Positions 17,983 to 63,640 of a DNA stretch of 64,000 nt are shown here, piece after piece. Position 1 is the stretch's first letter; the number at the start of each line of letters is the position of its first letter. This DNA is from Macrostomum lignano (lineage: Eukaryota), in NCBI GenBank assembly GCA_002269645.1, contig NIVC01000647.1:428979-492978 (forward strand). The letters run 5' to 3'. The translations under genes and the position numbers were made by a program. Below the pieces are notes generated by a model. It had not been told where the DNA came from. It saw nothing but the letters and a program-made list of their open reading frames with translations, and made no database searches.

Positions 17983-18036
17983 TATGTAAAAGCATACTAA
18001 GAAGGGAAAAAGCACAACAAGTTCCTTATCCCAAAC

Positions 18037-19040: not shown

Positions 19041-19126
19041 GATAACAAGGACAAGCACTAAGAACCGAATCCCAGCATTCCCCAAGACTAAGGCATCCCC
19101 AACAAAACAAATCCCCATTCACTTAC

Positions 19127-19380: not shown

Positions 19381-19430
19381 CTGTAAGAGGTTGACATTGT
19401 GGCAGCTTAGTGATTAGATACTGTAGATAC

Positions 19431-20170
19431 GATAGCTATTCTGTAGATGTGATAGCTATTCTGTAGATGTGATAGCTATTCTGTAGATGTGATAGCTATT
19501 CTGTAGATGTGATAGCTATTCTGTAGATGTGATAGCTATTCTGTAGATGTGATAGCTATTCTGTAGATGTGATAGCTATTCTGTAGATGTGATAGCTATT
19601 CTGTAGATGTGATAGCTATTCTGTAGATGTGATAGCTATTCTGTAGATGTGATAGCTATTCTGTAGATGTGATAGCTATTCTGTAGATGTGGTAGCTATT
19701 CTGTAGATGTGATAGCTATTCTGTAGATGTGATAGCTATTCTGTAGATGTGGTAGCTATTCTGTAGATGTGATAGCTATTCTGTAGATGTGATAGCTATT
19801 CTGTAGATGTGATAGCTATTCTGTAGATGTGATAGCTATTCTGTAGATGTGATAGCTATTCTGTAGATGTGATAGCTATTCTGTAGATGTGATAGCTATT
19901 CTGTAGATGTGATAGCTATTCTGTAGATGTGATAGCTATTCTGTAGATGTGATAGCTATTCTGTAGATGTGATAGCTATTCTGTAGATGTGATAGCTATT
20001 CTGTAGATGTGATAGCTATTCTGTAGATGTGATAGCTATTCTGTAGATGTGATAGCTACTCTGTAGATGTGATAGCTATTCTGTAGATGTGATAGCTACT
20101 CTGTAGATGTGATAGCTATTCTGTAGATGTGATAGCTATTCTGTAGATGTGATAGCTACTCTGTAGACGT
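19431..20170. repeat. Near-perfect 20-bp minisatellite (gatagctattctgtagatgt), about 37 copies, in whirlin intron 1
   Basis: Directly visible, with only a few substitutions. Confidence 0.98.
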
Positions 20171-28259: not shown

Positions 28260-28879
28260 AAATATTTGATGGAGCTGCAGCGGCTGGGACGTCAACGCCA
28301 CCGCTGGGGAACTGCCGGGCTGCCGAGCGCCTCATCCAAGCAGCTGCTGACATCGGCTCCAGCCCGCCGTACATGGCGATTCAGCGAGACCATCTCCAGC
28401 TGGCGGACCTGCTGGCTGAAGACGACCAGACGGCCATTCAGATGGCCATCCGAGCTGGCTTTGACGACCTGCTGCGGCTGCTTCTGGCGGCCGGTGATGA
28501 CGCGAACTGGCCGACCGCGGTGAGCCGCCGCTGCTCACCGCCATCTGTCTGGGATGGGCTGAGGCCGCGAGGCTGCTGTTCTCGGCCGGTGCCGACGCGA
28601 GTGTCCGAGGCGCTTCAGGCAGGAGAGGCGGAGCAGCTGAAGGAGAGTTCACCGATGCCTGCGATTCTCGCTGCAGCGAGCCTGGGACAGCGGGAGATTC
28701 TGGTCCACCTGCTGGCATCCGGAGCTGACTGCGACACGAGAGACAGGAAGGGGCAACCGTTTTTCACCATTTCGGCACGCAAAGACGGGACGATATTAAA
28801 GATCGTTCTGAACAAACTACTCATATCGGAAGGGGACAGTTTCAGAAAAAAGCTATCACATGGAAACCAACCAACCTGA
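28260..28879 (+). pseudogene. Ankyrin-repeat pseudogene (or exon with sequencing errors), several frameshifts
   Basis: TAIQMAIRAGFDDLLRLLLAAGDDAN, then in a shifted frame DRGEPPLLTAICLGWAEAARLLFSAGADASVRG, then PAILAAASLGQREILVHLLASGADCDTRDRKGQ. Confidence 0.7.
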
Positions 28880-42183: not shown

Positions 42184-43247
42184 ACATGGAACTTTGGACA
42201 GAAAAATATTCAGTCAGAAACTTTCAAAAAAGCAGATTGCTCTGAACTGGATTGAGCGGCGACGAAGGGGGAGAGAGGGAAGGAGAGGAGAGAAAGAGAG
42301 ACTACGAGGAGAATTCTGAGAAGGATTTTTCAGTTCTCGGCAGAAAACTCAATCAAACTCCTAGAGGCAATTTCTGCCGGTGGTAGATAAGTAAGACCCG
42401 TAGGAACTCTGTAAACAAGTTTTGTAAGGGAAACCTTCTTCATAAGATTTAATCGGGTGTTAGGTACATGTAGAGTCCTCATGAATAACTAATGAACCTT
42501 CATTCACCTGAGACTGGGGGGGGGGGGCGCCTGACGCATCTTAGTGCACCTGCCTAACAAATTCACGCCATGAATGCTTTCTCAACTGAAACGGCAACTT
42601 GAGCTGCTCGCTCACGAGACCCCACTGTACGCATCATTAGAGCTTGCAAAATACTCCCCACACACAGGCCTCATCTAGTCCTTATCCCCTGATGTAGCCC
42701 CCGGTCTCGCCAGCTTCCCTCATCATTCTAGCCTCAGCCTGCCAAAAGCTGTGGCAACAATGCTTCTCTCTCATTCACTCTCACTTTCGCCACTCTCTCT
42801 CACGCACACAGACTGCCACAGCTGCTTGAAGAAGTAAGTGGCTGGCTGTGGACATTGAAACGCCCCCCCCCCCCAATTATAAAGGTGTGAAAATCGCCAA
42901 GAGGATATTATATTGGCTCAATAAGGGAGTCACAGCCACCTTAGCCTGTGAGATTCTGTATGGGCAGAGCTACCCCCATCTCCCTCCATTCTTATCCCTA
43001 TGAGGGATAACTGGGAAGGCTGTAAGCGAGCCTCATCAATACCTGTATACGCATGCATATAATTCCGCCTATGGAGTCTAGTTTAAACAAAATCTTAAAT
43101 TTTCAAGTTTTTTAAGCCTTCGATTTTATACGGCTCGTATAGCTTACTTAGCCGCCCAGAGTTAATGAGACACTTTTTCAAGGTTTTTATATCCCCCAAA
43201 AGATCCCTGAAATTTCACTCAACAGTTTAACTGAGGTTCTTTGAGTC

Positions 43248-45600
43248 TAGATTAAGAAACTCATTGAGATTCTTGGCATCTAGATTGACAATCTCTTGAG
43301 ATTCGTCTCATCTAGATTGACAATCTCATTGAGATTCATCTCACATATAATTGGCAATCTCATTGAGATTCATCTCACCTATAATTGACAATCTCAAAGA
43401 TATTCCAGGCATCAAGTTTGAGAATCAAATTGAAGTTCTTTTCATCTAGATTGACAATCTCATTGAGATTCCTAGCATCTAGATTGAGATTCTCATTGAG
43501 ATTCCTAGCATCTAGATTGAGATTCTCATTGAGATTCCTGGCATCCAGATTAAGATTCTCATTGAGATTCCTGGCATCTAGATTGACAATCTCATTGATA
43601 TTCCTGGCATCTAGATTGAGAATCTAATTGAGATTAATCTCATCTAGATTGAGAATCTCATTAAGATTCCTGGCATCTAGATTAACAATCTCATTGAGAT
43701 TCATCTCACCTATAATTGACAATCTCATTGAGAATCATCTCACCTATAATTGACAATCTCATTGAGATTCATCTCACCTATAATTGACTATCTCATTGAG
43801 ATTCATCTCACCTATAATTGACAATCTCATTGAGATTCATCTCACCTATAATTGACAATCTCAAAGATATTCCAGGCATCCAGTTTGAGAATCAAATTGA
43901 AGTTCGTCTCATCTAGATTGAGATTCTCATTGAGATTCTTAGCATCTAGATTGAGATTCTCATTGAGATTCCAGGCATCTAGTATGATAATCAAATTAAT
44001 TTTCGTCTCATCTAGATTGAAAATCTAATTGATATTCCTGACATCTAGATTGACAATCTCATTGAGATTCATCTCACATATAATTGACAATCTCATTGAG
44101 ATTCATCTCACCTATAATTGACAATCTCAAAAATATTCCAGGCATCCAGCTTGAGAATCAAATTGAAGTTCATTTCATCTAGATTGACAATCTCATTGGG
44201 ATTCCTGGCATCCAGATTGAGATTCTTATTGAGATTCCTGGAATCTAGATTGACAATCTCATTGAGATTCATCTCATCTAGATTGAGAATCTAATTGAGA
44301 TTAATCTCATCTAGATTGAGAATCTCATTGAGATTCCTGGCATCTAGATTGACAATCTCATTGAGATTCATCTCACCTATAATTGACAATCTCATTGAGA
44401 TTCATCTCACCTATAATTGACAATCTCATTGAGATTCATCTCACCTATAATTGACAATCTCAAAAATATTCCAGGCATCCAGCTTGAGAATCAAATTGAA
44501 GTTCATTTCATCTAGATTGACAATCTCATTGAGATTCCTGGCATCTAGATTGACAATCTCATTGAGATTCATCTCATCTAGATTGGGAATCTAATTGAGA
44601 TTAATCTCATCTAGATTGAGAATCTCATTAAGGTTCCTGGCATCTAGATTAACAATCTCATTGAGATTCGTCTCATCTAGATTGACAATCTCATTGAGAT
44701 TCATCTCATCTAGATTGAGAATCTAATTGAGATTAATCTCATCTAGATTGAGAATCTCATTGAGATTCCTGGCATCTAGATTGACAATCTCATTGAGATT
44801 CATCTAACCTATAATTGACAATCTCATTGAGATTCATCTCCCCTATAATTGACAATCTCAAAGATATTCCAGGCATCAAGTTTGAGAATCAAATTGAAGT
44901 TCGTCTCATCTAGATTGAGAATCTCATTGAGATTCCTAGCATCTAGATTGACAATCTCATTGAGATTCCTAGCATCTAGATTGAGATTCTCATTGAGATT
45001 CCAGGCATCTAGTATGATAATTAAATTAATTTTCGTCTCATCTAGATTGAAAATCTAATTGATATTCTTGACATCTAGATTGACAATCTCATTGAGATTC
45101 ATCTCACATATAATTGACAATCTCATTGAGATTCATCTCACCTATAATTGACAATCTCAAAAATATTCCAGGCATCCAGCTTGAGAATCAAATTGAAGTT
45201 CATTTCATCTAGATTGACAATCTCATTGAGATTCCTGGCATCTAGATTGACAATCTCATTGAGATTCATCTCATCTAGATTGAGAATCTAATTGAGATTA
45301 ATCTCATCTAGATTGAGAATCTCATTAAGATTCCTGGCATCTAGATTAACAATCTCATTGAGATTCGTCTCATCTAGATTGACAATCTCATTGAGATTCC
45401 TGGCATCTAGATTAAGATTCTCATTGATATTCCTGGCATCTAGATTGACAATCTCATTGAGATTCATCTTACCTATAATTGACAATCGCAAAGACATTCC
45501 AGGCATCTAGTTTGATAATCAAATTGATTTTCGTCTCATCTAGATTGAGAATCTCATTGAGATTCGTCTCATCTAAATTAAGAATCTCATTGAGATTCCT
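43248..45600. repeat. About 33-bp AT-rich palindromic satellite, about 2.3 kb
   Basis: Unit atctagattgacaatctcattgagattcctggc with variants and recurring blocks. Confidence 0.95.
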
Positions 45601-47475
45601 CATTCATGTCGCACCTCTCGGTTGTCAAGACTACATGTAAATCTTCCCTCTAGATTTCATCGACCGAGCAAAAATGCCAAACTGGTCTTGCAACCTGCCA
45701 ATTAGCGCTAAGAAAAGTTTGCCGAACTGGATGCGTTCATGAACAAACGATGGATCTCAGTTTTTCATCCCGCCAAACGTGACAGTCAGCAGTCGCAATC
45801 AAGGTCGCTCTATAGCGCTGCACAGGTGATGCCCACACGCGCTAAAACCCCAAACTTGGGGCAGGTACTTCACAGCTTGCAGCCTCGTGCCAACCAGTCG
45901 CATATTTCAGCATCAGCCCTACAGCGCAAGGCCAAGTCAGTAGGCTGCGTTTGTCAAATTGTGTGGCTTTCCATTTTTCTTCCCAGTCAATCAGTTCGGA
46001 GGAGCCCGGTAGGCTGCAGGACACGCGAGGTCAGTTTTAAAACGAAAACGTTTAACTGCCAGAGAAAGTCACCGAGGTTCAACAGATTTAGGTCTCTGCC
46101 GCTGGCAATCGAAGTTGAGACTCCGTGTCTCTGACAGCAGCTTAGTTCAGATCGCTTTTCTAAAGTCTCGCACTAAATCGTCTCTAACTAGATCGATGCA
46201 TAACCGGTTGCGGCCTCCCTCTGTTCCTGAGCCCCTTCTTTTACGAGCTAGCTCCGACCAGCCCCAGGGGGTGGCCTGGGAAGTCCGAAGTCTTGACAGC
46301 TGACATTTCCCAAATTCCGCCTCTCTGGTATACAAGGAGAAGCAAAATGAGAAAAGAAAAGTCCTTCCTTTTAGAGCGACTGGCCCCTCCCCTCCTTCTG
46401 GATCAAACGATCTAATAATAGAATCTCGCTTGAGAAAATCCGAGATTTCCCTGCCCAACATATCGATGAGAAGAGTTTTCCAAACCGGTAGATAGGACTA
46501 CCATAAGCGCAAGCAGAACATGTAGAATGGAAGTGGCCGGAGGGGCCATGCGAGTCCCCCCTCCCAGTTCCCAGTTCTCAACCCTCATCATTCCCACATT
46601 TTGCTCCGCTTAAGCAGCAGTGGATCTTCATTCGTTTCGCGGAAAGCTTCTTAGTTGTGCCATCGGACTTCTGCTATTGGTTCCCACGCTGAGGAACGGG
46701 CCGGGCTGGCTGTGCAGTGCCGGAGTCCGCGCCTGCAGCCAACAGACTTCCATTTTCTGAGGCGCGAGAGGTGGTTGGAGCCCGCCGGGCTGGATGCTGA
46801 GGGAGGAGGTTGGCAATGAAGGAAAAGGCAAAATAGCTCCCGTCCTCGTCCTTTCTCAGTTTTTTTGCCACCTGCTTTAGACGATTGAAGTCTCCTCCAT
46901 TCAGACTCCCCTGCCGCCCCTCCTCCCCCCCGTTGCCTAAAGTTCAGCCGTTCCCCAGGCTTTCCGCCAAAAGATTTCTCCCCGCAACTATCCAGCAGCT
47001 TTTCCTACAAAAACATCCCCCACGATAGCTTTGTACCTTCCTTACTCGCAGCCGCCAGAGCTCCGGTTCCGTTGAGGAAACGCGAGAGCCAGGAGGCAGG
47101 GCGGGCAGGTACAGCAGGAGCACGAGAAAAGTCTCTCCTAACCCAGCAACTCAGAATTCAGGTTTCGTTTGCAAAACTCTCAAGCCTCATCACACTTGGG
47201 TTGAGAAAGTCAGCTAGAGCGAGAGACAAAAGACTTCTATTCAGACCGGGAGGGCTCGGGAGAGGCCCGGAGCGCCTCGACTTTAATCCGGCACGGTGGA
47301 GCGAGAGCGAGCTGACTTGAGCGCGCGGCTGGATTAAACCCGGGCCGGAAGCCAGACAAAGAAGCGCATAAGGACAAAAGCCAAAGCTGTGGTGCCCTCA
47401 GCTGCGAGGCCTGCATACAAGTAGCAGGGAGACGCGGTGGTCTGCAACTCAGCGGAGAACCACTGCCACGTTGCC

Positions 47476-48422
47476 ATGCAGCCGCTGAGCCTAGCAACAC
47501 TAGTTGCCGCTTCGGTTCTCCTGATGCTCGGGACCGCATCAGGCCAAGCTGGAATGAAGCCGAACTACACCAACATTGTGGACCGAATCGTAGGGCACAT
47601 CTTCACCAACTACAACAAGCACCAGAGACCCGTGCCGGCCAGCAGGCAGAACAAGGACGGCAAACTGGAGGAAGACCCGACACTCGTGTTAGTGAACATG
47701 AAAATTCTCAGCATCAACAAGGTCGACGTCATCAATATGGAGTTCACGCTGGACATGTACCTGAGGCAGTTCTGGCGCGATCACCGGCTCAGCTGGGAGA
47801 ATATCCCGCAGTTCAAGTTCTACAATGACTCCATCGCTATACCGGCCAAGAAGGAGCAACTGTGGCTGCCAGATCTTTTCTTTCGCAATGGAAAGCAAGG
47901 CTACCTGCACGAGATGACGCAGCCAAATTATCTAATCCGAGTTGAGCCGAACGGGCACATCCTGTACTCGCAGAAGGTTACAATGCGGTACGCTTGCCAG
48001 ATGCAGCTGCAGACGTTCCCGATGGACACGCAGACCTGCACTGTGAATATTGGCAGCTACGGATACACAACTCGAAACCTGCTGTTTCGATGGAAACGAG
48101 ACGAGAATAAAGCCTCAGTGGAGCTGGACAAAATGCAAATCTCGGAGTTCAACACGCCGAGCAGCGCCGAGACCATCGACTGCACGAAGGGCAGCGCCAC
48201 CAGCACCGGCGCCTACGCCTGCCTGTTGGTTGTCTTCAACCTCGAGAGGCAGCTCGGCAGTTACCTGTCCAGCACCTACATTCCCGCGATTCTCATCGTG
48301 ACAGTCAGCTGGCTGAACTTCTGGATCAGCGTTGAGGCCATACCGGCTCGCGTGTCCCTCGGCGTGCTCACTCTGCTCGGCATCCTAACCCAGGGCATGT
48401 CCGTCATCAACAACTTGCCCAG
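47476..48422 (+). CDS. Anion-selective Cys-loop receptor (GluCl/GlyR-like, flatworm type), variable exon V1: signal peptide + extracellular domain + M1 + M2
   Basis: Signal peptide MQPLSLATLVAASVLLMLGTASG; LWLPDLFF; Cys-loop CQMQLQTFPMDTQTC; loop-C Cys pair DCTKGSATSTGAYAC; M1; PARVSLG M2. Ends CCC AG|gtaaga (phase 2); 947 nt. Confidence 0.95.
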
Positions 48423-51076
48423 GTAAGAGTCAGCCTCGCTGAGTCATGCGCCCTCAGTCGACACCTCGGTGCTATTTTTAATTTGCTTGAATAAGTAATA
48501 CACAACGGAAGGCTCACATGGCGGCAATCTGATCGCAATTAGAGAAGGCCTTCTTGACCTGTTCAGGCCTGCCCCTCAGGTCTCTCTCCCGATCTTCGTT
48601 ACCTTTTTTCTTCCCGCACTCTCGACTCAAATCCCCAAACTTCAAGTCTTCCTCTCCGGAGAGAAACTTTGAGGAAATCTTCGGCGACATCTTTTGCTTT
48701 TCTTTCTCTTGCTATATAGCGAGCTCCTCTTTCTCTCCTCAACTTTCGCTTTCGTTTCGCGTGCCCCTTGTTGGTGCGTCACGTCTCTCTCGGCTCTGGG
48801 CACGCACGCACACACAGACGCCAGACGTGCACAGTTCATCGTGCTCTGCTCCAAGCAGCTGGTCACTCAGAGACTCACAGAGAAAAGTCCGAAAGTTGCA
48901 ACGGGCCTGCTCACACTAATTGCCAGGCCTGGGGAGAAGGGATTAGAGAGAGAGGGGGGAGGTTGGCGCTGTTTTCAACGCATCGCCACACTCTCCAGGC
49001 AGTCAGAGCATTCCTCGTTGCCTCTTAACGTTTTTTGCGACTAAACTTTGACTAAAGAGAAGACGAAAGCTGCGCGCTCACCATAGCAGCAGAGGCTGGG
49101 CTAGCAGCAGGGGGGCTGTCTCACTTCCTTTGCGGCGTGACTCTCTGAACTTTTTTTCTACTCAAAGTCTCATTCCGAGACTAACGAGGCACTCGTAAGA
49201 GTAAAGAATTGCGATGGTAGCTAATAGGGAGTGCATGAGCTACCTTCAACTTCTGCTGTCTTATATTAGGTTTTAAAACTCACATATGCCCCCCCCCGAT
49301 CCAGCTGTTTGCACTAACCTAACCCCGCTGTGTCAACATTGACAACTGCATTACTGCATGACGATATTCGCTACCAAATGGAATGAAACTCGGCGGTCTC
49401 TGCTGACTTGGGGTGCACATTAAATGTATTGACAGAGATGGGACAGGTGCGTGTATTAGTGATCAGACATCGTGCGACTTTCTGCCTTACAATCGAACCC
49501 TAAGAACGAAATGTTCTCTGTAAACCTGCAGTAGAAACAGCTGTCATTGATGGACACGCAGCCCATTGATGAAAGGATAGGGAGATAGTGGGATTCGGGG
49601 ATCTTAGATTGCAGCCTCTGTAGCTTAACAAGCCATAATACCGTTATTATACTCTACAATATGGGAACATGAAATCATATCATGCTAGTATAGTACTAAC
49701 AGCGAAAATCGCTTGGCCAATACCTGTACCGTACTACGTGAGCGAGCCGCGCATTCAGCCGCGAGCTGCTCACTGACGATGAGATCGGTGGCTCGGCCTA
49801 TAATCAAAGGCTAATTCTTTTCCACTCCAATGGGCCATCATGCCCTCCCCTCATACCTCCTCAGAAGATCTTTCTGCTATAATGCATCTAAGCTCAAGCG
49901 CAGGAGCAGACGGTTGCAAAAGATCGTAAAATCAATCGAAACCGTCTCTGGCTGGCAGAAAAGCAGAAAGAGGCGCGTTCTATCAATTGAGTGGATAGAT
50001 TCCCTGTCTTAGTTGCTTAGTTGCTAAGTCTTACCGAATAGACTCGCTTAATTACAGTATTTTTGAATCGATCCTCTCTATAGCAGCCCCTTAGTTAGTG
50101 ATAACTATTGCTTGTCTTGACAGGAACACAGCTAGGTCCCTGCTGTTGTATAAAAAAGGTTCCTCTTATGCCTTGAGCAACGCACAGCTCAAGTCGCCGT
50201 GCATACGGTGTCAATTTACCAATTCTAGCCATGCAGTCCATGGAAATTAGTCTCGAGTTACAGTTGATTTTCGATTTGCTAAAGGGGCTACTGGGGGCAG
50301 AGTTTGGCTCAGAATGGCATGCATTTTTGATTAGTAAGTCCAGCCCCACGGATTTGGTAAAAATGTAGTCAAACTTACAGTAAATGAGTAGAACTTGTTC
50401 AATCAGGCCATAACCGGATCTGAACCCCAGACACGGAGGCCTGGCATTCTTCTTTTCTAATTAGCTGCCCGGATGAAGAAGTCGATGAGCCATGGTTGTT
50501 CACTCGCGTCCTGTCGATTCTGTCGCAGATTCGGATTGCTCAACCCAGCAGACGAAAAGCAGAAAAGTTTCCCAAGCGTCTTTAAATTGAATTTACTCAG
50601 TCGAGCAACTGAGCTGCAGCCGGCTCCCAGAAAGGACAATATGGTAGGAAAAATTCGCAGGCAAAAATTGTTTATTAGAAGCTTCATTAGTTAACTTACA
50701 AGTCCTTCTTTCGTGGAACTGCGCAGTATTCTGATGAGGAAAATTCTAGACATGGCTACAAAAATAAGCCAATGTTTGCTAGTCAGCTGTCGGCCTGTCC
50801 ACTGAAGTTTGAAGAAGTTTGTACTTGAACCCAATTCAACAAATTAAATCCGTGTGCTTGTCAGTCTGCGCAGCTGACTAACAGAATTTACACCTTTTTT
50901 ATCTGTCCGATGTAGCAATATTCTTGCCGTGACGGATCAACGAACAACTTGAGCTGACACAGAAACAAGACAGACTTGTTTTGAATGAATGAACGATAAC
51001 TAATATAGTTTCGTAGTCACCAGTACAACACCTTCCGGAGTCTTTCCTGGGAATGGATTCACTACCTGAAATGTCA

Positions 51077-51731
51077 CAGGGGCGCCGCCATGGGTTTTAT
51101 GGTGGGTGTATTCTACATGAACATGTACATGAATAAATTCCTACATGTACATTATTTTCAGAATCGGTGTCGTCAGCGCTCATTTTTTCAACGCAGGCAC
51201 TCATTTTAGCGCCGCAGGCACTCATTTTAGCGCCGCAGGCACTCATTTTAGCGCCGCAGGCACTCATTTTAGCGCCGCAGGCACTCATTTTAGCGCCGCA
51301 GGCACTTATCTAAGCGCCGCAGACACTCATATTAGCGCCGCAGGCACTCATTTTGGCGCCACAGGCACTCATTTTGGCGCCACAGGCACTCATTTTGGCG
51401 CCACAGGCACTCATTTTGGCGCCACAGGCACTCATTTTGGCGCCACAGGCACTCATTTTAGCGCCGCAGGCACTTATCTAAGCGCCGCAGACACTCATTT
51501 TAGCGCCGCAGGCACTCATTTTGGCGCCGCAGGCACTCATTTTAGCGCCGCAGGCACTCATTTTGGCGCCGCAGGCACTCATTTTGGCGCAGTAGGCGCT
51601 ATGTTTTGTCGCTCTGAAGCAAAATTATTGATTTCAACCACGAGTCACAAGGTGGGGTAGCATGTCCCCCCATAGCTTTTACTGGAGGGGGGCATGTCCT
51701 CATGTCCCCCCGTCCGGTGGCGACGCCCCTG
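51077..51731. mobile_element. MITE-like element with an internal 21-bp tandem array
   Basis: TIR caggggcgccgcca / tggcgacgcccctg (1 mismatch in 14). Internal repeat gcaggcactcattttagcgcc at about 51170-51595. No clear TSD. Confidence 0.6.
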
Positions 51732-51976
51732 TGCAATGAGACTGAGTCAGATTTGTCAGTCAGCATCCTCTCACCTCTTAAGGCTCCATCACATAACTCA
51801 ATGATTGCTCGAAGATATAAAGAGAAGACAGTGTGACCAAAGCAACCAGCTTATTCTTTTAGGGACACGGCATTAGCTAGCATTTCGCTTGCAAGTGCCA
51901 AATTTGCTGCAATTATCATCCATAAAAATTGTTTTGAAATCTCTGAACGAAAGTGGGGACAAAATTTTTTTCCTGA

Positions 51977-52716
51977 TTGTTACCGGGACCAATTTTCGAC
52001 AGGAAGTTTGATTACTACAAAGAACAGGTGCCAATGTATCAAGATGGACCTGTCAAAGTGAATTTGACCATCAAGATTTTGAGAATCAGCAACATTGACC
52101 CAGTCAGCATGGAGTTCAGTGTCGAAATGTTCCTGAGAATGTTCTGGCAAGACCGTCGACTGGATTGGGAGAGTTTTCGGCAGTACCAATCTTATTTTGA
52201 TTCCATCGACTTTTCGAATGCGAAGGACACGCTGTGGCTGCCTGATGTGTATTTTTGGAACGGCAACGAAGGCTACCAGCACAAGATGGCTCAGCCGAAC
52301 CATCTCATCAAGGTTCAGCGCAACGGGAACATCCTCTACTCGCAGAAGACCACAGTGAAGTTCTCCTGCCACATGCAGCTGCAGACATTTCCATTTGATA
52401 CGCAGAATTGTAGAATTCACATCGGAAGCTATCGCCACACAACGAATCGTCAGTTACTGCGGTGGCACAACACAGAATACAGAAAAGCTATTGAGTTAGA
52501 CTCCGCGATGCAGATTAGCGAGTTTCAAGCGCCTGCTGAGCTGGAACTCATCGACTGTTCAAGAGGCAGCGCTACCTCCTCCGGTTTCTATCCTTGCTTG
52601 AAAGTGGAATTCAAACTGAAGCGCCACATTGTCCCTTACCTGTTGGCTCTGCTGCTATTACTAACGCTGCTGTGCATTTTGGCTCACATTTGTACTTTTG
52701 CTAACTGGCTGCCCAG
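51977..52716 (+). CDS. Cys-loop receptor variable exon V2 (divergent; lacks most of M1 and the PAR motif; 5' end/signal peptide not found, possibly a pseudo-exon)
   Basis: LWLPDVYF, Cys-loop CHMQLQTFPFDTQNC, loop C DCSRGSATSSGFYPC, then one hydrophobic helix. Ends CCC AG|gtaaga (phase 2). An in-frame TGA sits at 51974-51976. Confidence 0.8.
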
Positions 52717-54665
52717 GTAAGAATAGGCGTAGCTATGCAAACTATCCCTAAACAGCTCAGACGCTTGTAACTTGGACCAACAAGTAGCTATCCGTGTCCC
52801 ATTCGAATTGCCACGGACAACTGAGCCACAGATCTTCGAATTCTTTGACTCTCTTGAGCTACCCAAGCAATCCGCGAGCTGGAAAAACCTCTCGACTTAA
52901 ATTCCGGATCGGCCTTATTGATATCAAATTTAGTAGGGGCTACTGATACTGCATATGCTACTCACAAGTAGTGATTTAGCACGTCAGTTTGTAAAATATA
53001 AAAATAGGCTTCATTGAACTTGTAAATTTTTGCTCTCTAAGCTTCGGGAGTTGATTAAGCTCTAAAGAGAAGAGTCTCCGAGCCAGTTTCGGCAGAATTT
53101 TGGGAACATACAGTATTTTTGGGTTTTGCATTTAAAAGTTTTTTAACTATACGCTCGTATTACGAGCCCCTATTGACATGTTTTAAATGTTTATTTGGTG
53201 GACATTCGATTGAGCTTGAAACCATTACGCCTGAAAATGGATCCAGAATTTAAAAAACTGTTCTGCGTCCCAAGTCTCAGGTCTCCTTGGTCCAAAGGCT
53301 CCGTCGAGCACACTTTTGCCTGAGCCCACCCCTTCCTAGGCAGGGTTCGGCGGAAGTCCATGCTTAGCATAAACACGCACATTGGCTCCCGGTTCGCCAG
53401 ACTCGTGTATCAAATTATTCATACTAAATTGCAACTCCCTTGACCAAGTGAAACGCGCATTTAATGGCAATGGATTCTATATTCATAGCCATCGCGCTGC
53501 CTTCTGTCTGTGCACTGTAATAATTTTTTACATGTCAGGAGGGAGTTTCGGGAACTTTTAGGAGAGAAGACTTCAGCTTCCCTCGCGGTCCCAACATTGA
53601 CGCAGCTGCATCAACTCAACCGGAATTCTATACACCGCGCCGTGTCTCTCAACCCGACCCTGCCTCTCTCCCTTGTTCCACGCCTGTCCCTCCAGCCAAG
53701 CCATCTCTTCATACTCGCCTCTGTTCCTCCCTTGGACCGGAAAGGTGATTTCAGCCTGAGTGGCTTGACTTTACGCCTGTCATCAGCTGTGTGACTGACA
53801 CCAGCTGCTGCTGCTGTGAGAAGACCACACAGCATTTTTGTAACACCCTGTGCTGCACACACACACACGCACATGCGCACCTGGGCTTCTTCTCCTCGCG
53901 TTAATTCACGCGCGCACACAATGTCCCATTGCCTGAATATTAGTTAATTTCCTCTAACCTGTCATTCAGGCCTCTTTATTTTGCGCGAACTCTCGCTTAA
54001 TCTCAACTAATCTAAGCTGCGGAGCCGCGGGTGGCTTAGAAGCATATGCGACACTTCGGTGTTGCTTGATGGACATAAAACTGTATACAGTGTTATTGTA
54101 ACAGTTCGTGCAGATAGAGACAGCACCGCATCAGTTCGTTTCTACAGCGATGGCAGCAACGCGGTTTTTGTCGTGCTGATGCAAGATGCTGAAGTTAGTG
54201 CGGGAATAAAACAGGCAGTTGATAAAATCTCTAATAGGTGCGTGGACACATTGAAGCCTGAAGAAGGGTTCAGGGATTCATTAAAAATAACAAAATTGTA
54301 GCCACGGGGAATAATAGATCAGCGAGTGTAAAATACTCCTCTTTTTCATCCAGTATTCTGAGGGAAGGAGAGAGGTCGCCCCGTCATTGGCCGAGCGTAC
54401 TCGGGGCAGAGTGGGGGCAGGCAGTCACCGTGCCAATCCGGTACCCGTCTGAACTCAACTTACCCTGACCTCTAAAAAACGCCTAAAGCTGGCAGGCCTC
54501 GCGACTGCGCATCCGTCTTCTTCCAAGCACCATCACCTCGTCGTCATAATCCCGATCAAATGTTCTGGGATCAACCAGGGCTATTCAGGTAGTCTTCGGG
54601 TCCGATAATCAAGCAGCAACGCAGCCTCAATCAGAAGTGGACAACCGCGAGAGGAGAGTGTCGGC

Positions 54666-55681
54666 ATGGCGACGGCGGCGGCGCCAGACTGCAACCGGCG
54701 GTGCACGAAGCTTTCGCTGTCGCTGCTGCTGCCGCTGCTGCCGCTGCTGTTGCTGAAGCCCTTGCCGGCCTCGGCGGGCACCACGGCCTCAAACTACACC
54801 AACATAGTAGACCGCATTGTTGAGAAAATCTTCACCAACTACAACAAGCACCAGCGGCCAGTGGAAGTTTTTGATACGATGGGAGGCAAGCCGCAGCCGC
54901 CGCTGGTTGAAGGTGGAAAACCGTTTGAGCCGCCGACTAAAGTCGACGTGAACATGAAAATTCTCAGCATCAACAAGGTCGATGTCATAAATATGGAGTT
55001 CAGCTTGGACATGTACCTGAGGCAGTTCTGGCGCGATCACCGGCTCAGCTGGGAGAATATCCCGCAGTTCAAGTTCTACAATGACTCCATCGCTATACCG
55101 GCCAAGAAGGAGCAGCTGTGGCTGCCAGATCTTTTCTTTCGCAACGGAAAAGAGGGTTACCTGCACAAGATGACGCAGCCAAATTATCTAATCCGAGTGG
55201 GTCCGAACGGTGACATCCTGTACTCGCAGAAGATCACCATGAAGTTCTCCTGCCAGATGCAGCTGCAGACATTCCCCATGGACATACAGAACTGCTTCGT
55301 CAACATCGGCAGTTACGGTTACACAACCAAGAATCTGCTGTTCAAGTGGAAGCAGGACAAGGACAAACAGCCGGTGGAGCTGGACACTTCAATGCAGATT
55401 GCCGAGTTCAACACGCCCGGCAAAGCAAAGACCATCGACTGCACCAAAGGCAGCGCCACCAGCACTGGCGCCTACGCCTGCCTCAAGGCGGAGTTCAAAC
55501 TGGAGAGGCAGCTGAGCAGCTACCTTGCTGGGACCTACATCCCTTCTATCCTCATCGTGACAGTCAGCTGGCTGAACTTCTGGGTCAACATTGAGGCCGT
55601 GCCCGCCAGGGTGACTCTGGGACTGCTCACTCTGCTGGGCATTCTCACTCAGGCTTCGACCGTGATGGGAAATTTGCCCAG
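54666..55681 (+). CDS. Anion-selective Cys-loop receptor, variable exon V3: signal peptide + extracellular domain + M1 + M2
   Basis: Leu-rich signal peptide; Cys-loop CQMQLQTFPMDIQNC; loop C; M1; PARVTLGLLTLL M2. Ends CCC AG|gtgaga (phase 2); 1016 nt. Confidence 0.96.
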
Positions 55682-58600
55682 GTGAGACTAGTCAGGAGAC
55701 GAGGGTCCATCCCTCTAGGGAAAATTGAGCCCGTGGGATCGTATCCCGATGCTCATTTCCATATCCTTGACGTATTGTCGCTGCCTCTCTGCTCAATCAT
55801 CTGGCCACGTCTCGGCCGTAAATCTCGCAAACCAGCCGCCTACTTTGCATAACCAAGAACTGGAAAAAAGGGATTCAGCTGAGAAATGATGATGCGGTTG
55901 ACTGAGTCTTAGACTCTAGGAGGGGCTTTAGACGATAAAAAATATCAAGTTTGGAGAGAAATTACCAAGAAGATCGAAACTTTGCTATCACAGTCTGAGC
56001 AGTGACTTCGGGTATTGAGCTGCATGCGGAAAGTTAAATATGTGATGGTGGATGCTGCTCAAAAAATTCTTTCTTCATTTTCTATGCAAGGCATCACGTA
56101 CCCGAAAATACTAAATGATTTGTTGATTCACCAAAGTCCCAAAAATACGTGCCAAGGAGGCTGGCATGAAAAAGCAAAAGAAAAGACAGAGACAGAAAGA
56201 AGTAAAAGATGAAGAACAACCGTCTTTTTGAGTTTGCTATCCGGGAGTTTGTGCAAACACAGCGAGCTAGGAAAGAGAGCGACGCAAGTTCCAACCAGAG
56301 CCGAATTCTGAAGTTATTTGTCGAATTTCGGACCAATCGACAAATTTCCCCTCTGATTTTCCACTGCATCAACTAACTTCCCCCCCCCCCCCAGTACACA
56401 CACAACCACAATGTGGACTCAGCACTCCCGTCCACTCTTGTTCACATTCAGGGTCCAGCTTTCAGCCTGATTGACCCCAGGCTGGCAGTGCTTTCCCTCC
56501 CAGTTTCTCTGACTGCCCGCTTAGCCTAAGGAGATGCGTGTTTAACCGGCCTTAGAGAGAGAGAGAGAGAGAGAGAAAAGTTGCTTCTCTGGGAATGCTC
56601 ATTCTCGAGCTGACGCAGCAGCGGAATTGGATTGAAGTGGAAGAGAACCCCCCGCGCTCTCGAGTCCCCACTCGGCCGACTCGCCCAAGTCAGCTTAGTA
56701 ACTGCATGCCAGTTTCTATGAAAATAGGAAAAAGACCGTTTTAAAGTGTTTTCGCTTTATAAAAGAAAATCTCTTTTCTTGGCTGGGGGAAGGGCTGAAA
56801 GGTTTTGAGCTCAGTGGTCAGCTCGGACCAGAGCAAGAGCTCCCTTACTCCCCCTGAGGCAATCAGTTGAGGCAGCGGCAGCTGTTCCAGTTCCGAAAAC
56901 TGAAACAGTGCGCCTACACTTTCTCTCCATTCCAAGGTCCCTGTCTGTATATTTTTCCGCGTCTGTATTCCTCTTTTTTAAATTCTCTCTCGCTGCCCCT
57001 GCATGTCTCGGCAAAGCAAAGCAGCTTCCCTTTTTTCACAGAATCGCACTCCTGATGGACCGGACGACCAACTAGGGGAACCCCGGGGGCTCTGTTTATA
57101 CAGGCCTTTCAACTGCAGCGGCTCTGTATCTCCCCGGGGCTCAATCAGCCACGCCCTCTCCCCCTGCCTCTTTTCACTGTCCCCTTATACCGTTCTCCAA
57201 GCAAGAAGGCGCATTGCGAGAGTTGCGGCAAGGAACAGTTCTGCCAGTCTTCTAGGTGTTGCTGTTGGTTCTGCTTCTTCTGCTTTTGCTGTTGTTGTAG
57301 CTGTTTCTGACGCCCCGGCTGATCTCCCTGTTGTCAAGCGGATGTGACATGCAGCGGCTCGTCAGCTCGTCAGCCTTCCCCCGGCCCGTGGCTTCACCTC
57401 CTTCGCCCCCCAACCTCCTGACCATGCAGCCCTGGCTGGCCGAATCTTGCCAAGAAAACTGCCTTGTTTCTTCTCGTTTACAGGAGTGGAAAATTTTCGC
57501 CAAAAAATAATCGGATCCAACGAATCTGCGGATGTATATGCACAACAAATAAAGTACATTTCATCAGCCTTGTAAACATTCCAGCAAGTCAGGAGTAGAC
57601 TCGGCTACTTTCTGAGCCTCCTGTCGTGTTTGACTGATTTCGGCCTTCATTATTAGGGCCTAAAATTGCTAATAGCGCCGTGGGATGCATCGTTGCTTTG
57701 AAAATTACTGGATGCTGCTTTGTAGTTTTCTTTTCTCTCTCTCGCTCCCATCTTTCTCTCCTCCAGCTCCGCCTACTCACTCCCTCAGTGTCTTCTCCCT
57801 CACTGCCTGAGCTGACGACAGCTCACAGCAGATCGATAACTCACTTGCTGATGCCGATGCATCGTTTCTGCCCTGCCCATAGCTCTGCCAAAGTCCCTTC
57901 ACCAGTGTTTAACATTTTAGCTATAGCAGCTGCATCGTGTCCAATGGCAACAACAAGAGAAGCCTTGACGTCTTGAGCTAAAAAACGGGATGTTGTCAGA
58001 TTTTGAGCTTTTATATTTGTTGATTCTACAAGAATTGGCATTCCGAAGAGGCGTTATCATGGCTGGAGAGTGGCAGTTGAGGCCGGAAATTTTCAGTTTG
58101 AATTGAGGTACGGTTCGATCTCACGTTGAGCCTCTCCTGACCAAAACAAAATCCTCGACTACTCACTCTTGTCATCCTGTCAGCGGCTCTCCAGAGACTC
58201 TGCCTGCGACTCCCGCTGTCTCAAATCTTCCCCCTTTCCACCCTCGACCGAAGTCCCTCCACCTCGTTTCTTGGACTGTGTGAGGGGAGTTTGAACTCAA
58301 CGCAGGTTTGAGGAACAGCGGAGGGAGAGAATCTGAAAGGGGGAGTTTTAGACATAGCGAGGAGTGGAGTTAGCAGTGGCCTGCACGGCTGCGGGAGGGA
58401 GTAGAGAAAATGAGTCGAAGGTAGTTCAGCTCTCTCAGAAAGCGACATTTCGACTGAAGTCTATGCTGGCCTGCGATTCTAACTCAGCCCCACCGGCACC
58501 CCAGAGCCCGAATTCCGATTCCGAAATGCCCGAGGAGAGAGGAGAGAGAGACAGAGAGAAACGAAGGACTTCTAGGGGCGGCTATCCAAGTTTCTGTGCC

Positions 58601-59101
58601 TGCCTGGAAGCAGGAAACCCGCGGAGAGACCAACTGGCAGGGACTGCAAAATCTTGGCTTGAGGAATCCAAGAGGAGTAGGGGAGAGAGGAGGGAACGGT
58701 GCAGTCCCGACGCAGCCACTCACTCGAATACTTGATGGGGAATTCTGCATGAGGGCACTCGTCGGCTCGGTCTAGGGGAATTCAGTTCAGCTCTTCTTTC
58801 GGGGGCCCTGGATTCACAACAATCTGCAAGGAAATCGGCTATGAGCTGATGACGGAGTCTGAAAATTGAACTAAGATATTAAAATCTTTTTCAGCACTAA
58901 TTTGCATAAATTTGGAGATGGAATGTTAATACTATTAATTGATTATAGTTGAGACATTATAATACATCGCATAAATTCATCTACATGCTCTGAGAGGCTA
59001 ATAAAATAGGCTATTCATCTCATTTGGAAGACTTCGACCCATCATTCGAATCGCAATGCAAACACACAGATGCTAAGAGCTCCCAATACCTCCTCCACCA
59101 G

Positions 59102-59588
59102 AGTGGCGTACATCAAGGCCATAGACATCTGGATCATCGCCAGCATCATGTTCGTCATCGGCGCCCTGATCGAATTCGCCGTCGCTTCATTCCGCGCCCG
59201 TCGAACCAAAATGGAGAACTGGCAGCAGGAGATTCGCTGCGTGGTTCGCTCGGAACTCCAGCGACTCGCCGTCATCCGGGGTCCGCCACCGGGCCTGCCG
59301 ACTCCCGGCTCAGCCGCCGTAGCCTCCGCCGGCAACGCGCATGGCTATCCGGGTTTCCCAGAGGAGCTCGAAGACCTTCTGGTGGTCAGCGTAGAGGAGG
59401 GCGGCAAAGGCGCCAGCGGAGGCGGTGCCGCTCAGACGGCCTCGCCGGTGCCCTCGCCGGACTCTGACATCGACGCCTACAGCCGGTTCCTGTTCCCGGC
59501 CTGCTTCCTGCTGTACAACTGTTTCTATTGGCTCTACTATCTTGTGCTGGTTGTCAAGATCGACACGGGGGAGGCGGACAAGGCGTGA
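59102..59588 (+). CDS. Cys-loop receptor constant exon C: M3, intracellular loop, M4
   Basis: ctccaccag|A GTG GCG TAC (phase 2) gives R-VAYIKAIDIWIIASIMFVIGALIEFAVASF...IDAYSRFLFPACFLLYNCFYWLYYL. TGA at 59586-59588; AATAAA at 59759-59764. Confidence 0.95.
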
Positions 59589-60654
59589 GAGAGACTGACG
59601 GATCAGCTGGTGACCCGAAGTTGCATGGGCACTGAACACAAAGGGACCGTGTTTTGGGTGATCTTTGAGCACTGTTGTCTCAGCGGATGCCAGGTCTCAG
59701 GTCCATTCGCTCTGACTTTTCTTAAGAACTTCTTAAGTAGATCGTAAAGTGGAGTGGTAATAAATCATACATTTTTCCTACCAAAACGCGCGATTATCGC
59801 ATGGCACTCGAATGTTCTAAATCTTTACGCAAAAATCGAAAGTTACTATTAATTTTTGAAGATTAAGTCTGACTAAAGAACCTACTATTGAAAAAGGGGC
59901 ATCTTTCGTATTGGACTGAATACATTTTGCAAAGCTAAGGATTGTCTCTGCAAATACATAACCAACGCCTTCGGAAGTCCTTCTGTTCGACATGCGTAAG
60001 ACCACAAAGAAGTTTAAAAGCCCCATCGGGTTTCGGGATCATTGATGCATTTCTGATGCTTGACAACGGTTCACTTGGAGCCATTAGCAGCGACTTCATG
60101 CCCTCTATTACTGTTGGTTCGTCTGTAGCAGTTTGGAAATCCGCAGTGACTGGCTCAAGTAGAAAAAAGCATTGAACAGCACTTTGTACTTTACCGACTG
60201 TCTGATTGTGTTTAACACAGACACAAGAAATTCAACTTGTCTGCAGTCTTGTGATTTACCAAATTATTCTATTGTTATTGCAAATTTTATTTATATTTCA
60301 AATCCGTTAACTAGCGCCGATAATCCTATATTGTAATTACAATTTGTCAAAATTTTAACTGTTTTTAATTTGTATTCATTTAACTACAGCTCAGCAAGTC
60401 AGTTCATATTTGTTTTTTTGATAAACTGTTCACATCTGCATTAAAACTACCTTGCGATTCATAACAATGTACATAAATTATGAGCAGTTCAATTTTAATC
60501 TCAAAGTTTGCCGCTAACATTGATATTTCTGCAAGTCTAATTTTTTCAATAGCTATTTGCTACTTGTGGCGTTTTCTTTAAAGTCTGGAATTATTCTATT
60601 TTTAACCTATACACTAAATCTGTATCTGCTACACTCTGCTCACTTTCAATGCAT

Positions 60655-63289: not shown

Positions 63290-63619
<330 letters not shown>

Positions 63620-63640
63620 TACATCTAAAGCATTAATTCA

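What the first reader, a model, noticed from the sequence alone, without database searches (positions are those of the whole stretch)
47476..59588. Protocadherin-like clustered Cys-loop channel locus: three variable ECD-M1-M2 exons, one shared M3-M4 exon
Seen in sequence: three paralogous exons with no internal introns (47476-48422, 51977-52716, 54666-55681) each end at the same codon position, LP-AG|GT (phase 2). The only matching acceptor exon (R-VAYIKAIDIW..., M3, loop, M4) is at 59102, and no M3-M4 sequence lies between the variable exons. V1 and V3 each have their own ATG and signal peptide, giving predicted 477-aa and 500-aa subunits. Established: clustered protocadherins and UGT1A use this variable-first-exon/constant-exon design, whereas known pLGIC splicing (Drosophila Rdl, GluCl) swaps only short exons and pLGIC extracellular domains are normally split by many introns. 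Inference: one locus makes subunits with different agonist sites and pore linings on an identical M3/intracellular loop/M4, allowing combinatorial pentamers with common trafficking. I know of no earlier description for an ion channel.
Basis: partly seen in the sequence, partly recalled or inferred. Interest (0 to 1): 0.92.

Follow-up and report, generated by a model that had tools for sequence, protein, structure and literature searches.

The report
Flatworm chloride-channel gene, alternative first exons
A free-living flatworm (Macrostomum-type) gene for a glutamate-gated chloride channel has two intact first exons, each encoding the ligand-binding domain plus the first two membrane helices, and one shared last exon, so it probably makes two channel subunits; this layout is unreported for this receptor family but still lacks RNA proof.

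Summary
The sequence observation holds. V1 (47476-48422), V2 (51977-52716) and V3 (54666-55681) are paralogous Cys-loop receptor exons. All three end at CCC AG|GT in phase 2. Only one M3-loop-M4 exon is in the window (59102-59588), behind a good acceptor.

The window comes from a Macrostomum-like flatworm, and the proteins belong to the flatworm glutamate-gated chloride channel clade (about 50% identical to SmGluCl-2). A Macrostomum lignano contig has the same V1...V3...C layout with the same splice phases. Against that locus V1, V3 and C each give dN/dS of about 0.14 (0.04-0.08 over M1-M2), so the upstream exon V1 is not a decaying partial duplicate.

The most likely reading is one gene with two alternative first exons and a shared terminal exon.
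- V2 is defective. It has no start codon or signal peptide, one membrane helix is missing, the glutamate-binding arginine is lost, and it evolves 3-10 times faster than V1 or V3.
- The agonist-binding residues of V1 and V3 are the same, and gene conversion homogenises their central domain. The conserved differences lie in the N-terminal loop and in M1-M2.
- Intron-poor genes are normal in this flatworm family, and nematode unc-49 is a known mirror-image precedent.

I found no transcript evidence.

The parts
47476..48422 (+). V1: alternative first exon. It holds the ATG, signal peptide, whole extracellular domain, M1, M2 and the start of the M2-M3 linker (316 codons minus one base), with donor CAG|GTAAGA at 48422/48423.
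   Evidence: ORF and sequence. Pfam LBD and TM profile from position 1. Counterpart in M. lignano at L001 10001-10944, with dN/dS 0.14 overall and 0.076 over pre-M1 to M2.
51977..52716 (+). V2: defective third copy. It has most of the extracellular domain and one hydrophobic helix only, with no start codon or signal peptide. The donor CAG|GTAAGA is kept. A weak possible acceptor lies at 52001-52002.
   Evidence: Best public relative is only 52% identical. Relative-rate test gives 32-42 unique changes in V2 against 4-12 in V1 or V3, p<=3e-4. Of 75 family-invariant positions, 19 are changed.
54666..55681 (+). V3: alternative first exon. It holds the ATG, signal peptide, an extracellular domain with a ~20-residue N-terminal insertion, M1 and M2, with donor CAG|GTGAGA at 55681/55682.
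   Evidence: Counterpart in M. lignano at L001 22006-23000, with dN/dS 0.14 overall and 0.039 over pre-M1 to M2.
59102..59588 (+). C: shared terminal exon. It encodes the third base of the Arg codon, M3, the intracellular loop, M4 and the stop codon. It is preceded by a pyrimidine tract and AG at 59100-59101.
   Evidence: It is the only M3-M4 match in the window. Counterpart at L001 24824-25304, dN/dS 0.145.
59759..59764 (+). AATAAA, a candidate polyadenylation signal about 170 nt after the stop codon of exon C.
   Evidence: Read from the sequence. Not tested further.
47692..47942 (+). Gene-conversion tract in V1, matching 54948-55198 in V3. It covers the beta1-beta2/loop D region through loop A. 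Positions 47692-47888 show 6 differences in ~197 nt, including 109 identical bases in a row.
   Evidence: Paralogue identity is 0.90-1.00 here, against 0.67-0.92 between the window and M. lignano.
54948..55198 (+). Partner of the gene-conversion tract, in V3.

Best explanation
This is one gene for a flatworm-type glutamate-gated chloride channel (an anionic Cys-loop / pentameric ligand-gated channel) with two functional alternative first exons and one common last exon.

Proposed mechanism:
- Transcription starting upstream of V1, or upstream of V3, gives a pre-mRNA whose first exon has only a 5' splice site.
- That site is joined to the first good 3' splice site downstream, the one in front of exon C. 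The introns are 10.7 kb (V1) and 3.4 kb (V3).
- In a V1-initiated transcript, V3 has no evident acceptor and is removed as part of the intron.

The products are two subunits of 477 and 500 aa. They have the same M3, cytoplasmic loop and M4. They differ reproducibly in the N-terminal loop after helix alpha1, in M1, in the M1-M2 loop and in M2 (2' Ser vs Thr; 15'-20' GMSVIN vs ASTVMG). They do not differ in the residues that bind glutamate.

V2 is most probably a decaying or highly derived leftover of a third copy and cannot give a canonical four-helix subunit.

The V1/V3 duplication is older than the split between this locus and the M. lignano locus. Recurrent gene conversion keeps the middle of the two extracellular domains alike.

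Shown: the anatomy, conservation of the layout, purifying selection, the fold of the V1-C product and the gene conversion. Inferred: separate promoters, the V1-C and V3-C splices themselves, and glutamate gating.
For: - Anatomy and frames.
- Domain content.
- Family placement: the best hits are flatworm GluCl-like proteins, M. lignano at 75% and SmGluCl-2 at ~50%. SmGluCl-2 and SmGluCl-3 are proven homomeric GluCls (PMC3757052).
- The loop A Arg (FFRN), the amino-acid-agonist motif and PAR at the M2 start are present in V1 and V3 (motif defined in PMC4338433).
- The same V1...V3...C layout occurs in M. lignano contig NIVC01001215.1. It has the same AG|GT donors and a CAG|G acceptor, and only one C exon.
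- Only the exons are conserved between the two loci, at ~77-80% nt identity.
- dN/dS is V1 0.138, V3 0.140 and C 0.145, and 0.076 and 0.039 over pre-M1 to M2. V1 is therefore a constrained coding exon even though it lacks M3-M4 of its own.
- The V1-C AlphaFold model has pLDDT 84 and pTM 0.72 with helices M1-M4. It matches GlyR, GABA-A beta3 and GluCl structures with target TM-score 0.83-0.91. phmmer against the PDB gives GlyR alpha1 at 1.6e-73, running straight across the exon junction.
- No pyrimidine-rich acceptor lies upstream of either ATG (sequence).
- The M. lignano gene models derive from RNA-seq (PMC5730564). They include separate models for mV1 (P0004, which uses the LPR donor) and mV3 (P0150). 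This implies both exons are transcribed and that the V1 donor is used.
Against: - No transcript or protein in the searched collections joins any V exon to C.
- The three public M. lignano models do not make that join. P0004 joins mV1 to an out-of-frame piece of a DIRS-like retroelement. P0044 has an unrelated tail. P0150 is cut short by a spurious 13-nt gap.
- dS between the two loci is about 1, which is near saturation, so the dN/dS values are approximate.
- I could not tell whether the two loci are orthologues in two species or old paralogues.
- Promoters cannot be assessed.
- Macrostomum uses spliced-leader trans-splicing widely, and this could complicate the simple two-promoter picture.
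Confidence: 0.7

Rival explanations
1. Only V3-C is a working channel gene. V1 is transcribed but not joined to C. It would give a truncated ECD-M1-M2 protein (the read-through codon after Arg is TAA) or be spliced to other sequences, perhaps acting as a decoy or dominant-negative partner.
For: The only RNA-derived model that uses the V1-type donor (M. lignano P0004) joins it to a retroelement exon and not to C. No V1-C product is on record.
Against: - The retroelement is absent from the window, so that splice is not conserved.
- M1-M2 of V1 is under very strong constraint (dN/dS 0.076), which makes sense for a pore-forming subunit.
- The donor and its phase are conserved in both loci and match the single C acceptor.
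- The TACO assembly kept only dominant isoforms (--isoform-frac 0.75), so a V1-C isoform could have been discarded.
Confidence: 0.15
2. This is a true three-member, protocadherin/UGT1A-like variable-exon cluster. V2 is also functional, either from an undetected leader exon or as an in-frame internal cassette, and promoter choice produces combinatorial pentamers.
For: - V2 keeps a 247-codon open frame and the consensus donor in the same phase.
- Neutral simulation gives only a 4-14% chance of no stop codon at its level of divergence.
- dN/dS of its ECD against V1 and V3 is ~0.12-0.13.
- A possible acceptor at 52001-52002 would be in frame with the V1 donor, giving a 714-nt symmetric exon.
Against: - V2 has no ATG, signal peptide or leader exon.
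- One membrane helix is missing, so M3-M4 would be inverted in the membrane.
- The loop A Arg is replaced by Trp and 19 of 75 invariant positions are changed. Evolution is 3-10 times faster than in V1 or V3.
- V2 is not present in the M. lignano locus and has no close relative anywhere.
- The putative acceptor has a poor pyrimidine tract, and a matching phase is a 1-in-3 chance.
Confidence: 0.07
3. The layout is an assembly artefact. V1 (and V2) are 5' parts of separate tandem genes whose own M3-M4 exons were collapsed or lost from the assembly.
For: Macrostomum genomes are repeat-rich and partly duplicated. Other M. lignano Cys-loop genes do occur as full tandem duplicates, each with its own M3-M4 exon (P0147/P0189).
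Against: Two independent sequences (the window and L001) show the same V1-V3-C order with a single C. Neither has runs of N. The intervening DNA is unique, non-homologous sequence.
Confidence: 0.05

Closest known systems
Genes with multiple variable first exons and constant downstream exons (UGT1A, clustered protocadherin alpha/gamma, GCNT2; see PMC1885805, PMC3325998)
   Same: Tandem paralogous 5' exons each carry their own start codon and a large functional domain. Each ends in a 5' splice site of the same phase. One shared downstream coding region has a single 3' splice site. Concerted evolution among variable exons is also seen.
   Different: Only two intact variable exons are present, against 9-50+. 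There is a single constant exon. Individual promoters, stochastic choice and the CTCF/enhancer mechanism are untested and need not apply. The variable/constant boundary falls inside the transmembrane domain (between M2 and M3) and not at a domain border.
Nematode unc-49 GABA receptor locus (C. elegans, H. contortus, D. immitis; described in bioRxiv 10.1101/2025.10.30.685166). By my own knowledge, avr-14 (GluCl alpha3A/B) is a similar case.
   Same: One locus of an anionic Cys-loop receptor yields several distinct subunits by joining a shared block to large alternative blocks. The subunits can co-assemble.
   Different: It is the mirror image. In unc-49 the 5' exons (loops D, A, E and part of B) are shared, and the 3' exon sets (the rest of the ECD plus M1-M4) alternate through alternative splicing or 3' end choice. 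Here the 5' two-thirds alternate, presumably by promoter choice, and M3-M4 is shared.
Schistosoma mansoni SmGluCl-2 / SmGluCl-3 and their neodermatan orthologues (PMC3757052, PMC4338433)
   Same: Same clade, at about 50% identity. They share the loop A arginine, the 12-residue loop C disulphide, PAR at the cytoplasmic end of M2 and an intron-poor gene structure. This is the basis for predicting glutamate-gated chloride channels.
   Different: Those genes are single-exon and make one subunit per gene (the SmGluCl-2.1/2.2 variants differ only slightly). The Macrostomum gene has an intron in the M2-M3 linker and two first exons.
Short alternative exons in Cys-loop receptor genes: insect Rdl exons 3 and 6, GluCl exon 3, nAChR D-alpha6, and GABRB3 exon 1/1a (own knowledge). 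Duplicated internal exons are also seen in the Owenia GlyR-like gene L004.
   Same: Diversification of one receptor gene by duplicated exons.
   Different: Those exons swap 20-70 residues (one or two loops, or only the signal peptide). Here about 320 residues are swapped, comprising the whole ECD, M1 and M2.

Membership tests
[quoted passage not shown] | Neur_chan_LBD followed by the Neur_chan_memb domain | tested here: met
   Pfam E-values are 2e-45 / 3e-28 for V1-C and 9e-44 / 2e-28 for V3-C. V2-C matches the TM profile only from position 35.
[quoted passage not shown] | Cys-loop with 13 residues between the cysteines | tested here: met
   CQMQLQTFPMDTQTC in V1, CQMQLQTFPMDIQNC in V3 and CHMQLQTFPFDTQNC in V2.
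[quoted passage not shown] | Four transmembrane helices M1-M4 in the mature product, in the canonical fold | tested here: met
   Met for the inferred V1-C product. The AF2 model has pLDDT 84.3 and helices at 260-283, 289-313, 322-374 and 438-470. Foldseek target TM-score to GlyR, GABA-A and GluCl is 0.83-0.91. V2-C does not meet it, since one helix is missing.
Flatworm ('S-like') glutamate-gated chloride channels | Clusters with SmGluCl-type proteins and not with GABA, Gly or ACh receptors | tested here: met
   The top ~100 hits are platyhelminth GluCl-like proteins at 44-58% identity, including SmGluCl-2 isoform 2 (P0026, 50%). Vertebrate GABA-A and GlyR are at ~30%. I built no formal tree.
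Flatworm ('S-like') glutamate-gated chloride channels | Amino-acid-agonist motif plus the loop A arginine that binds the glutamate alpha-carboxyl (PMC4338433) | tested here: met
   V1 and V3 have LWLPDLFFRN, LRQFW, GSYGYT and TSTGAY. V2 has YFWN (Arg to Trp), GSYRHT and TSSGFY, so it does not meet the feature.
Flatworm ('S-like') glutamate-gated chloride channels | Glutamate-evoked chloride currents | not testable with these tools
   This needs oocyte or cell electrophysiology. The PAR motif at the M2 start predicts anion selectivity.
Variable-first-exon / constant-exon gene (UGT1A / clustered protocadherin design) | Two or more tandem paralogous 5' exons, each with its own initiation codon and no upstream acceptor | tested here: met
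   V1 and V3 meet it. V2 fails, since it has no ATG.
Variable-first-exon / constant-exon gene (UGT1A / clustered protocadherin design) | Every variable exon ends in a 5' splice site of one phase, with a single shared constant region and no private downstream exons | tested here: met
   The same holds in M. lignano L001.
Variable-first-exon / constant-exon gene (UGT1A / clustered protocadherin design) | Mature mRNAs that join each variable exon to the constant exon | not testable with these tools
   No Macrostomum transcript collection was available. Exact and junction-centred protein searches found nothing.
Variable-first-exon / constant-exon gene (UGT1A / clustered protocadherin design) | A separate promoter in front of each variable exon | not testable with these tools
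   There is only an indirect hint: M. lignano RNA-derived models treat mV1 and mV3 as separate transcripts.
Clustered protocadherins specifically | A large array of variable exons with stochastic, CTCF-dependent promoter choice that gives cell identity codes | tested here: not met
   Only two intact exons are present. The choice mechanism is untestable. The label 'protocadherin-like' is not warranted beyond the general exon layout.
unc-49-type multi-subunit locus | Shared 5' exons with alternative 3' exon sets | tested here: not met
   The orientation is the reverse: alternative 5' exons with a shared 3' exon.

The most novel reading that the evidence does not exclude
The locus is a real, regulated variable-exon system. 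V1 and V3 are driven by separate promoters in different cell types, or within one cell, so that pentamers mix two pore/N-terminal variants on one common M3-loop-M4 module. V2 is not dead. It would be used as a third unit, for instance as an in-frame internal cassette (52003-52716, 714 nt, phase 2 at both ends) or from an undetected leader, giving a non-canonical product that carries a receptor extracellular domain.
Probability: 0.08. Interest if true: 0.75.

Novelty: new variant of a known kind. Interest (0 to 1): 0.45.

Why it matters
If V1-C and V3-C mRNAs are confirmed, this would be the first Cys-loop receptor gene known to me in which about two-thirds of the subunit is exchanged by first-exon choice. 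That part comprises the signal peptide, the whole ligand-binding domain, M1 and the pore-lining M2, while M3, the cytoplasmic loop and M4 stay constant.

- It would show that a split between M2 and M3 is tolerated as a natural module boundary.
- It would complement the mirror-image unc-49 design.
- It would give a natural experiment on which subunit properties reside in M1-M2 and which in M3-M4: pore, desensitisation and drug sites at 2' and 15', versus trafficking and clustering through the loop.
- Practically, it shows that current M. lignano gene models for this GluCl are wrong. This matters because flatworm GluCls are considered anthelmintic targets and Macrostomum is used as a model for parasitic flatworms.

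It does not open a long-standing question, and the cluster is small.

Tried and rejected
- Exact look-up of the 477-aa and 500-aa products, and of the two unspliced ORFs, in the 15-billion-protein collection: none on record.
- Profile search centred on the M2/LPR/M3 junction plus exon C, meant to catch V1-C or V3-C fragments from transcriptomes: no Macrostomum protein containing exon C exists in the collection. The absence is therefore uninformative.
- Word-indexed search with V2: no candidates. The full HMMER scan gave a best identity of only 52%.
- Look-up of the second M. lignano V1-like protein, P0044: not on record, so a third locus could not be examined.
- Search for a private leader exon for V2 (ATG, hydrophobic stretch, phase-2 GTRAG donor) between V1 and V2: none found.
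- Search among all retrieved homologues for pairs with identical C-terminal but different N-terminal parts, the signature of the same design in another species. Only P0147/P0189 turned up, and these proved to be a fused model of two complete tandem genes.
- Test of whether the LPR|V intron is ancestral. It is absent in an annelid GlyR-like gene and in the intronless neodermatan orthologues. Its origin is left open.
- Literature searches for a pLGIC with variable first exons, and for the M. lignano gene identifiers: nothing found.
That region is a 33-bp minisatellite (43232-45602) next to a 27-bp one (40004-42182). Neither V1 nor V3 shows a convincing acceptor upstream of its ATG.

Full report
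**1. What is in the sequence**

- V1 (47476-48422) and V3 (54666-55681) each start with an ATG and a hydrophobic leader. Each runs without interruption through the whole extracellular domain, M1 and M2 to ...NLPR.
- V2 (51977-52716) is a shorter open frame of the same family.
- All three end CTGCCCAG|GTAAGA or GTGAGA, that is, after the second base of an Arg codon.
- The only compatible acceptor is ...cctcctccaccAG|A at 59100-59102. It opens an exon that encodes VAYIKAIDIW (M3), a Gly/Pro/Ala-rich loop, M4 and a stop at 59586-59588, followed by AATAAA at 59759.
- V1+C and V3+C read through as 477 and 500 residues. Both carry the two Pfam domains of neurotransmitter-gated channels.
- A deliberately permissive tblastn (word size 2, E<=10) finds no second M3-M4 anywhere in the 64 kb and no further V-like exon.

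**2. V2 is not equivalent to V1 and V3**

- A TGA lies directly in front of its frame, and homology to V1 and V3 begins only in the second half of helix alpha1.
- No ATG-plus-signal-peptide exon with a phase-2 donor exists between V1 and V2.
- Between the end of the extracellular domain and LPR, V2 has about 33 residues where V1 and V3 have 60. One of the two helices M1/M2 is therefore gone. The Pfam transmembrane profile aligns to V2-C only from position 35.
- The loop A arginine, which in lophotrochozoan GluCls binds the alpha-carboxyl of glutamate (PMC4338433), is a tryptophan in V2. V2 has changed 19 of the 75 positions that are invariant in ten relatives.
- Tajima relative-rate tests give 32-42 unique changes in V2 against 4-12 in V1 or V3 (p between 1e-7 and 3e-4).
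- V2's closest relative among 1.8 billion representative proteins is only 52% identical, and it has no counterpart in the M. lignano locus.
- On the other side, its frame is open over 247 codons. Under neutral point mutation to a comparable divergence this happens in 4-14% of simulations. Its donor is also intact.
- I regard V2 as a decaying or strongly derived copy and leave its status open.

**3. Organism and family**

- The best database matches are platyhelminth proteins. The closest are Macrostomum lignano fragments (75% and 73% identity over the V part). Next come full-length GluCl-like proteins of other flatworms at 44-58%, including Schistosoma mansoni SmGluCl-2.
- SmGluCl-2 and SmGluCl-3 form homomeric glutamate-gated chloride channels in oocytes, and their genes are single exons (PMC3757052). 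The Echinococcus granulosus orthologue is likewise a 1437-bp intronless gene.
- An intron-free extracellular domain is therefore normal for this family. What is special in Macrostomum is one intron in the M2-M3 linker.
- V1 and V3 have the complete binding motif of the 'S-like' GluCl clade (LRQ in loop D, FFRN in loop A, GSYGYT in loop B, TSTGAY in loop C) and PAR at the start of M2. Glutamate-gated anion channel subunits are the reasonable prediction.

**4. The layout is conserved**

- M. lignano contig NIVC01001215.1 (locus L001) carries a V1-type exon (10001-10944), a V3-type exon (22006-23000) and a single C exon (24824-25304). The donors are again CAG|GTAGG in phase 2, and the acceptor CAG|G completes the Arg codon.
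- Each V exon again has its own ATG and leader.
- Between the window and L001 only these exons are alignable, at 77-80% nucleotide identity. Introns and flanks are not.
- Nei-Gojobori estimates give dN/dS 0.138 for V1, 0.140 for V3 and 0.145 for C. For the stretch from pre-M1 to the donor they give 0.076 (V1) and 0.039 (V3).
- dS is about 1, so the ratios are approximate, but the direction is unambiguous. The upstream exon V1, which has no M3-M4 of its own in either locus, is kept as coding sequence as strictly as V3 and C.
- I cannot say whether the window and L001 are orthologues in two species or old paralogues. M. lignano has at least one more V1-like exon elsewhere (P0044, 83% identical to both). 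Either way the V1-V3-C arrangement predates their divergence.

**5. How V1 and V3 differ**

- A four-way codon alignment shows a mosaic.
- The loop after helix alpha1 is type-specific. It is short in V1 (PASRQ.KDG..EED) and about 20 residues longer in V3.
- M1, the M1-M2 loop and M2 are also type-specific (V1-type ...FWISVEA.PARVSLG...TQGMSVINNLPR; V3-type ...FWVNIEAVPARVTLG...TQASTVMGNLPR). There each type is closer to its counterpart in the other locus than to its neighbour.
- The central extracellular domain behaves the opposite way. In the window, V1 47692-47888 and V3 differ at 6 of ~197 bases. In M. lignano, mV1 10204-10675 and mV3 differ at 8 of ~472 bases (dS 0.12, against ~1 between loci).
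- This is recurrent gene conversion. It means the agonist-binding loops of the two isoforms are kept alike.
- The stable functional difference is therefore in the N-terminal loop and in the pore and its upper end (2', 15'-20'). By general knowledge of GlyR, GABA-A and GluCl, these positions influence conductance, desensitisation and the ivermectin/anaesthetic site. That last link is inference.

**6. Is the spliced product sensible?**

- An AlphaFold2 model of V1-C, built with 48 homologues, has mean pLDDT 84 and pTM 0.72. It shows the N-terminal helix, the beta-sandwich and four long helices. Low confidence is confined to the signal peptide and the cytoplasmic loop.
- It superposes on GlyR alpha2/alpha3, GABA-A beta3 and C. 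elegans GluCl with target-normalised TM-scores of 0.83-0.91.
- The sequence alignment to GlyR alpha1 runs straight across the exon junction.

**7. Transcript evidence**

- I found none that shows a V-C junction.
- The M. lignano models are derived from RNA-seq (StringTie/TACO/TransDecoder, PMC5730564), so they indicate that both V exons are transcribed and that the V1 donor is used.
- All three models are faulty downstream. P0004 joins mV1 to an out-of-frame segment of the gag-like ORF of a DIRS-like retroelement (reverse transcriptase plus tyrosine recombinase) inserted between mV1 and mV3. P0150 (mV3) is frameshifted by a 13-nt pseudo-intron. P0044 has an unrelated tail.
- Only dominant isoforms were retained in that assembly.
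- This is the main weakness of the case and the reason confidence is 0.7 and not higher.

**8. Comparison with known systems**

- The exon logic is that of genes with multiple variable first exons (UGT1A, clustered protocadherins, GCNT2; PMC1885805). With two intact members and no information on promoter choice, 'alternative first exons' is the accurate term. 'Protocadherin-like cluster' is not.
- Within the receptor family the nearest precedent is the nematode unc-49 locus. There shared 5' exons (loops D, A, E and part of B) are joined to alternative 3' exon sets that encode the rest of the subunit. The present gene is its mirror image.
- Other M. lignano Cys-loop genes exist as complete tandem duplicates, each with its own M3-M4 exon (P0147/P0189). 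This suggests the origin here was either duplication of the first exon alone, or loss of the upstream copy's last exon.
- Literature searches found no description of a Cys-loop receptor with this design.

**9. Verdict**

The feature is real, conserved and probably functional, and it is a new variant of a known gene architecture. It was oversold as a three-member combinatorial cluster with different agonist sites. It is interesting to ion-channel and flatworm specialists, but RNA confirmation is needed.

Noticed in passing
window 2055-4794, minus strand: These are 5' coding exons of an inositol 1,4,5-trisphosphate receptor. Pfam Ins145_P3_rec scores 5e-64 and MIR 1e-55. They are separated by an intron filled with a ~1 kb (GACA/GACAGACG)n-type microsatellite that creates long spurious ORFs on both strands.
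   Followed up: partly
window 1-996 (+) and 28373-28879 (+): An open frame running off the window start has a weak TatD-DNase match (2.6e-5, below the Pfam cut-off). A separate exon-like ORF carries ankyrin repeats.
   Followed up: partly
window 40004-42182, 43232-45602, 51192-51597, 63290-63623: Large minisatellites lie around and inside the locus: 27 bp x 81, 33/66/99 bp x 71, 21 bp x 19 (between V1 and V2) and (GACA)84.
   Followed up: no
L001 (M. lignano NIVC01001215.1) 16061-19961: A DIRS-like retroelement sits between mV1 and mV3, with a gag-like ORF carrying a SAP domain, a reverse transcriptase and a tyrosine recombinase. It is flanked by duplicated copies of a minisatellite (13.1-15.4 kb and 20.4-21.2 kb) and of the ~75 bp just upstream of the mV3 ATG (16061-16135, similar to 21928-22002). 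The annotated protein P0004 takes its C-terminal 66 residues from this element.
   Followed up: partly
L001 22743-22760: The M. lignano gene model P0150 (BOX15_Mlig000841g6) omits 13 nt (CGCCATTGTGGAG) inside the mV3 exon. This shifts the frame and ends the protein at 261 aa. The gap lies exactly where mV1 and mV3 start to differ after the conversion tract, so it is probably an artefact of reads from the paralogue.
   Followed up: partly
P0147 / P0189 (M. lignano, another anionic Cys-loop subfamily): The 1677-aa UniProt model P0147 is a fusion of two complete tandem genes plus about 700 residues of non-receptor sequence. In that subfamily the intron lies a few codons earlier in the M2-M3 linker (...SSSVT|SGMPRVSY).
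   Followed up: partly
L004 (Owenia fusiformis CAIIXF020000001.1) 8945-9031 / 9560-9688 and 11670-11876 / 12923-13123: The annelid GlyR-like gene has two pairs of duplicated internal exons (Cys-loop exon and loop B-C exon). They look like mutually exclusive alternatives of the insect Rdl type. There is no intron at the LPR|VSY position.
   Followed up: no
P0148 (Lingula), P0151 (Glandiceps), P0153 (Mesorhabditis): These predicted proteins have 2-5 consecutive ligand-binding domains. They may be fused models of tandem receptor genes, or of tandem first exons, in other phyla. They are worth screening for the same variable-exon design.
   Followed up: no
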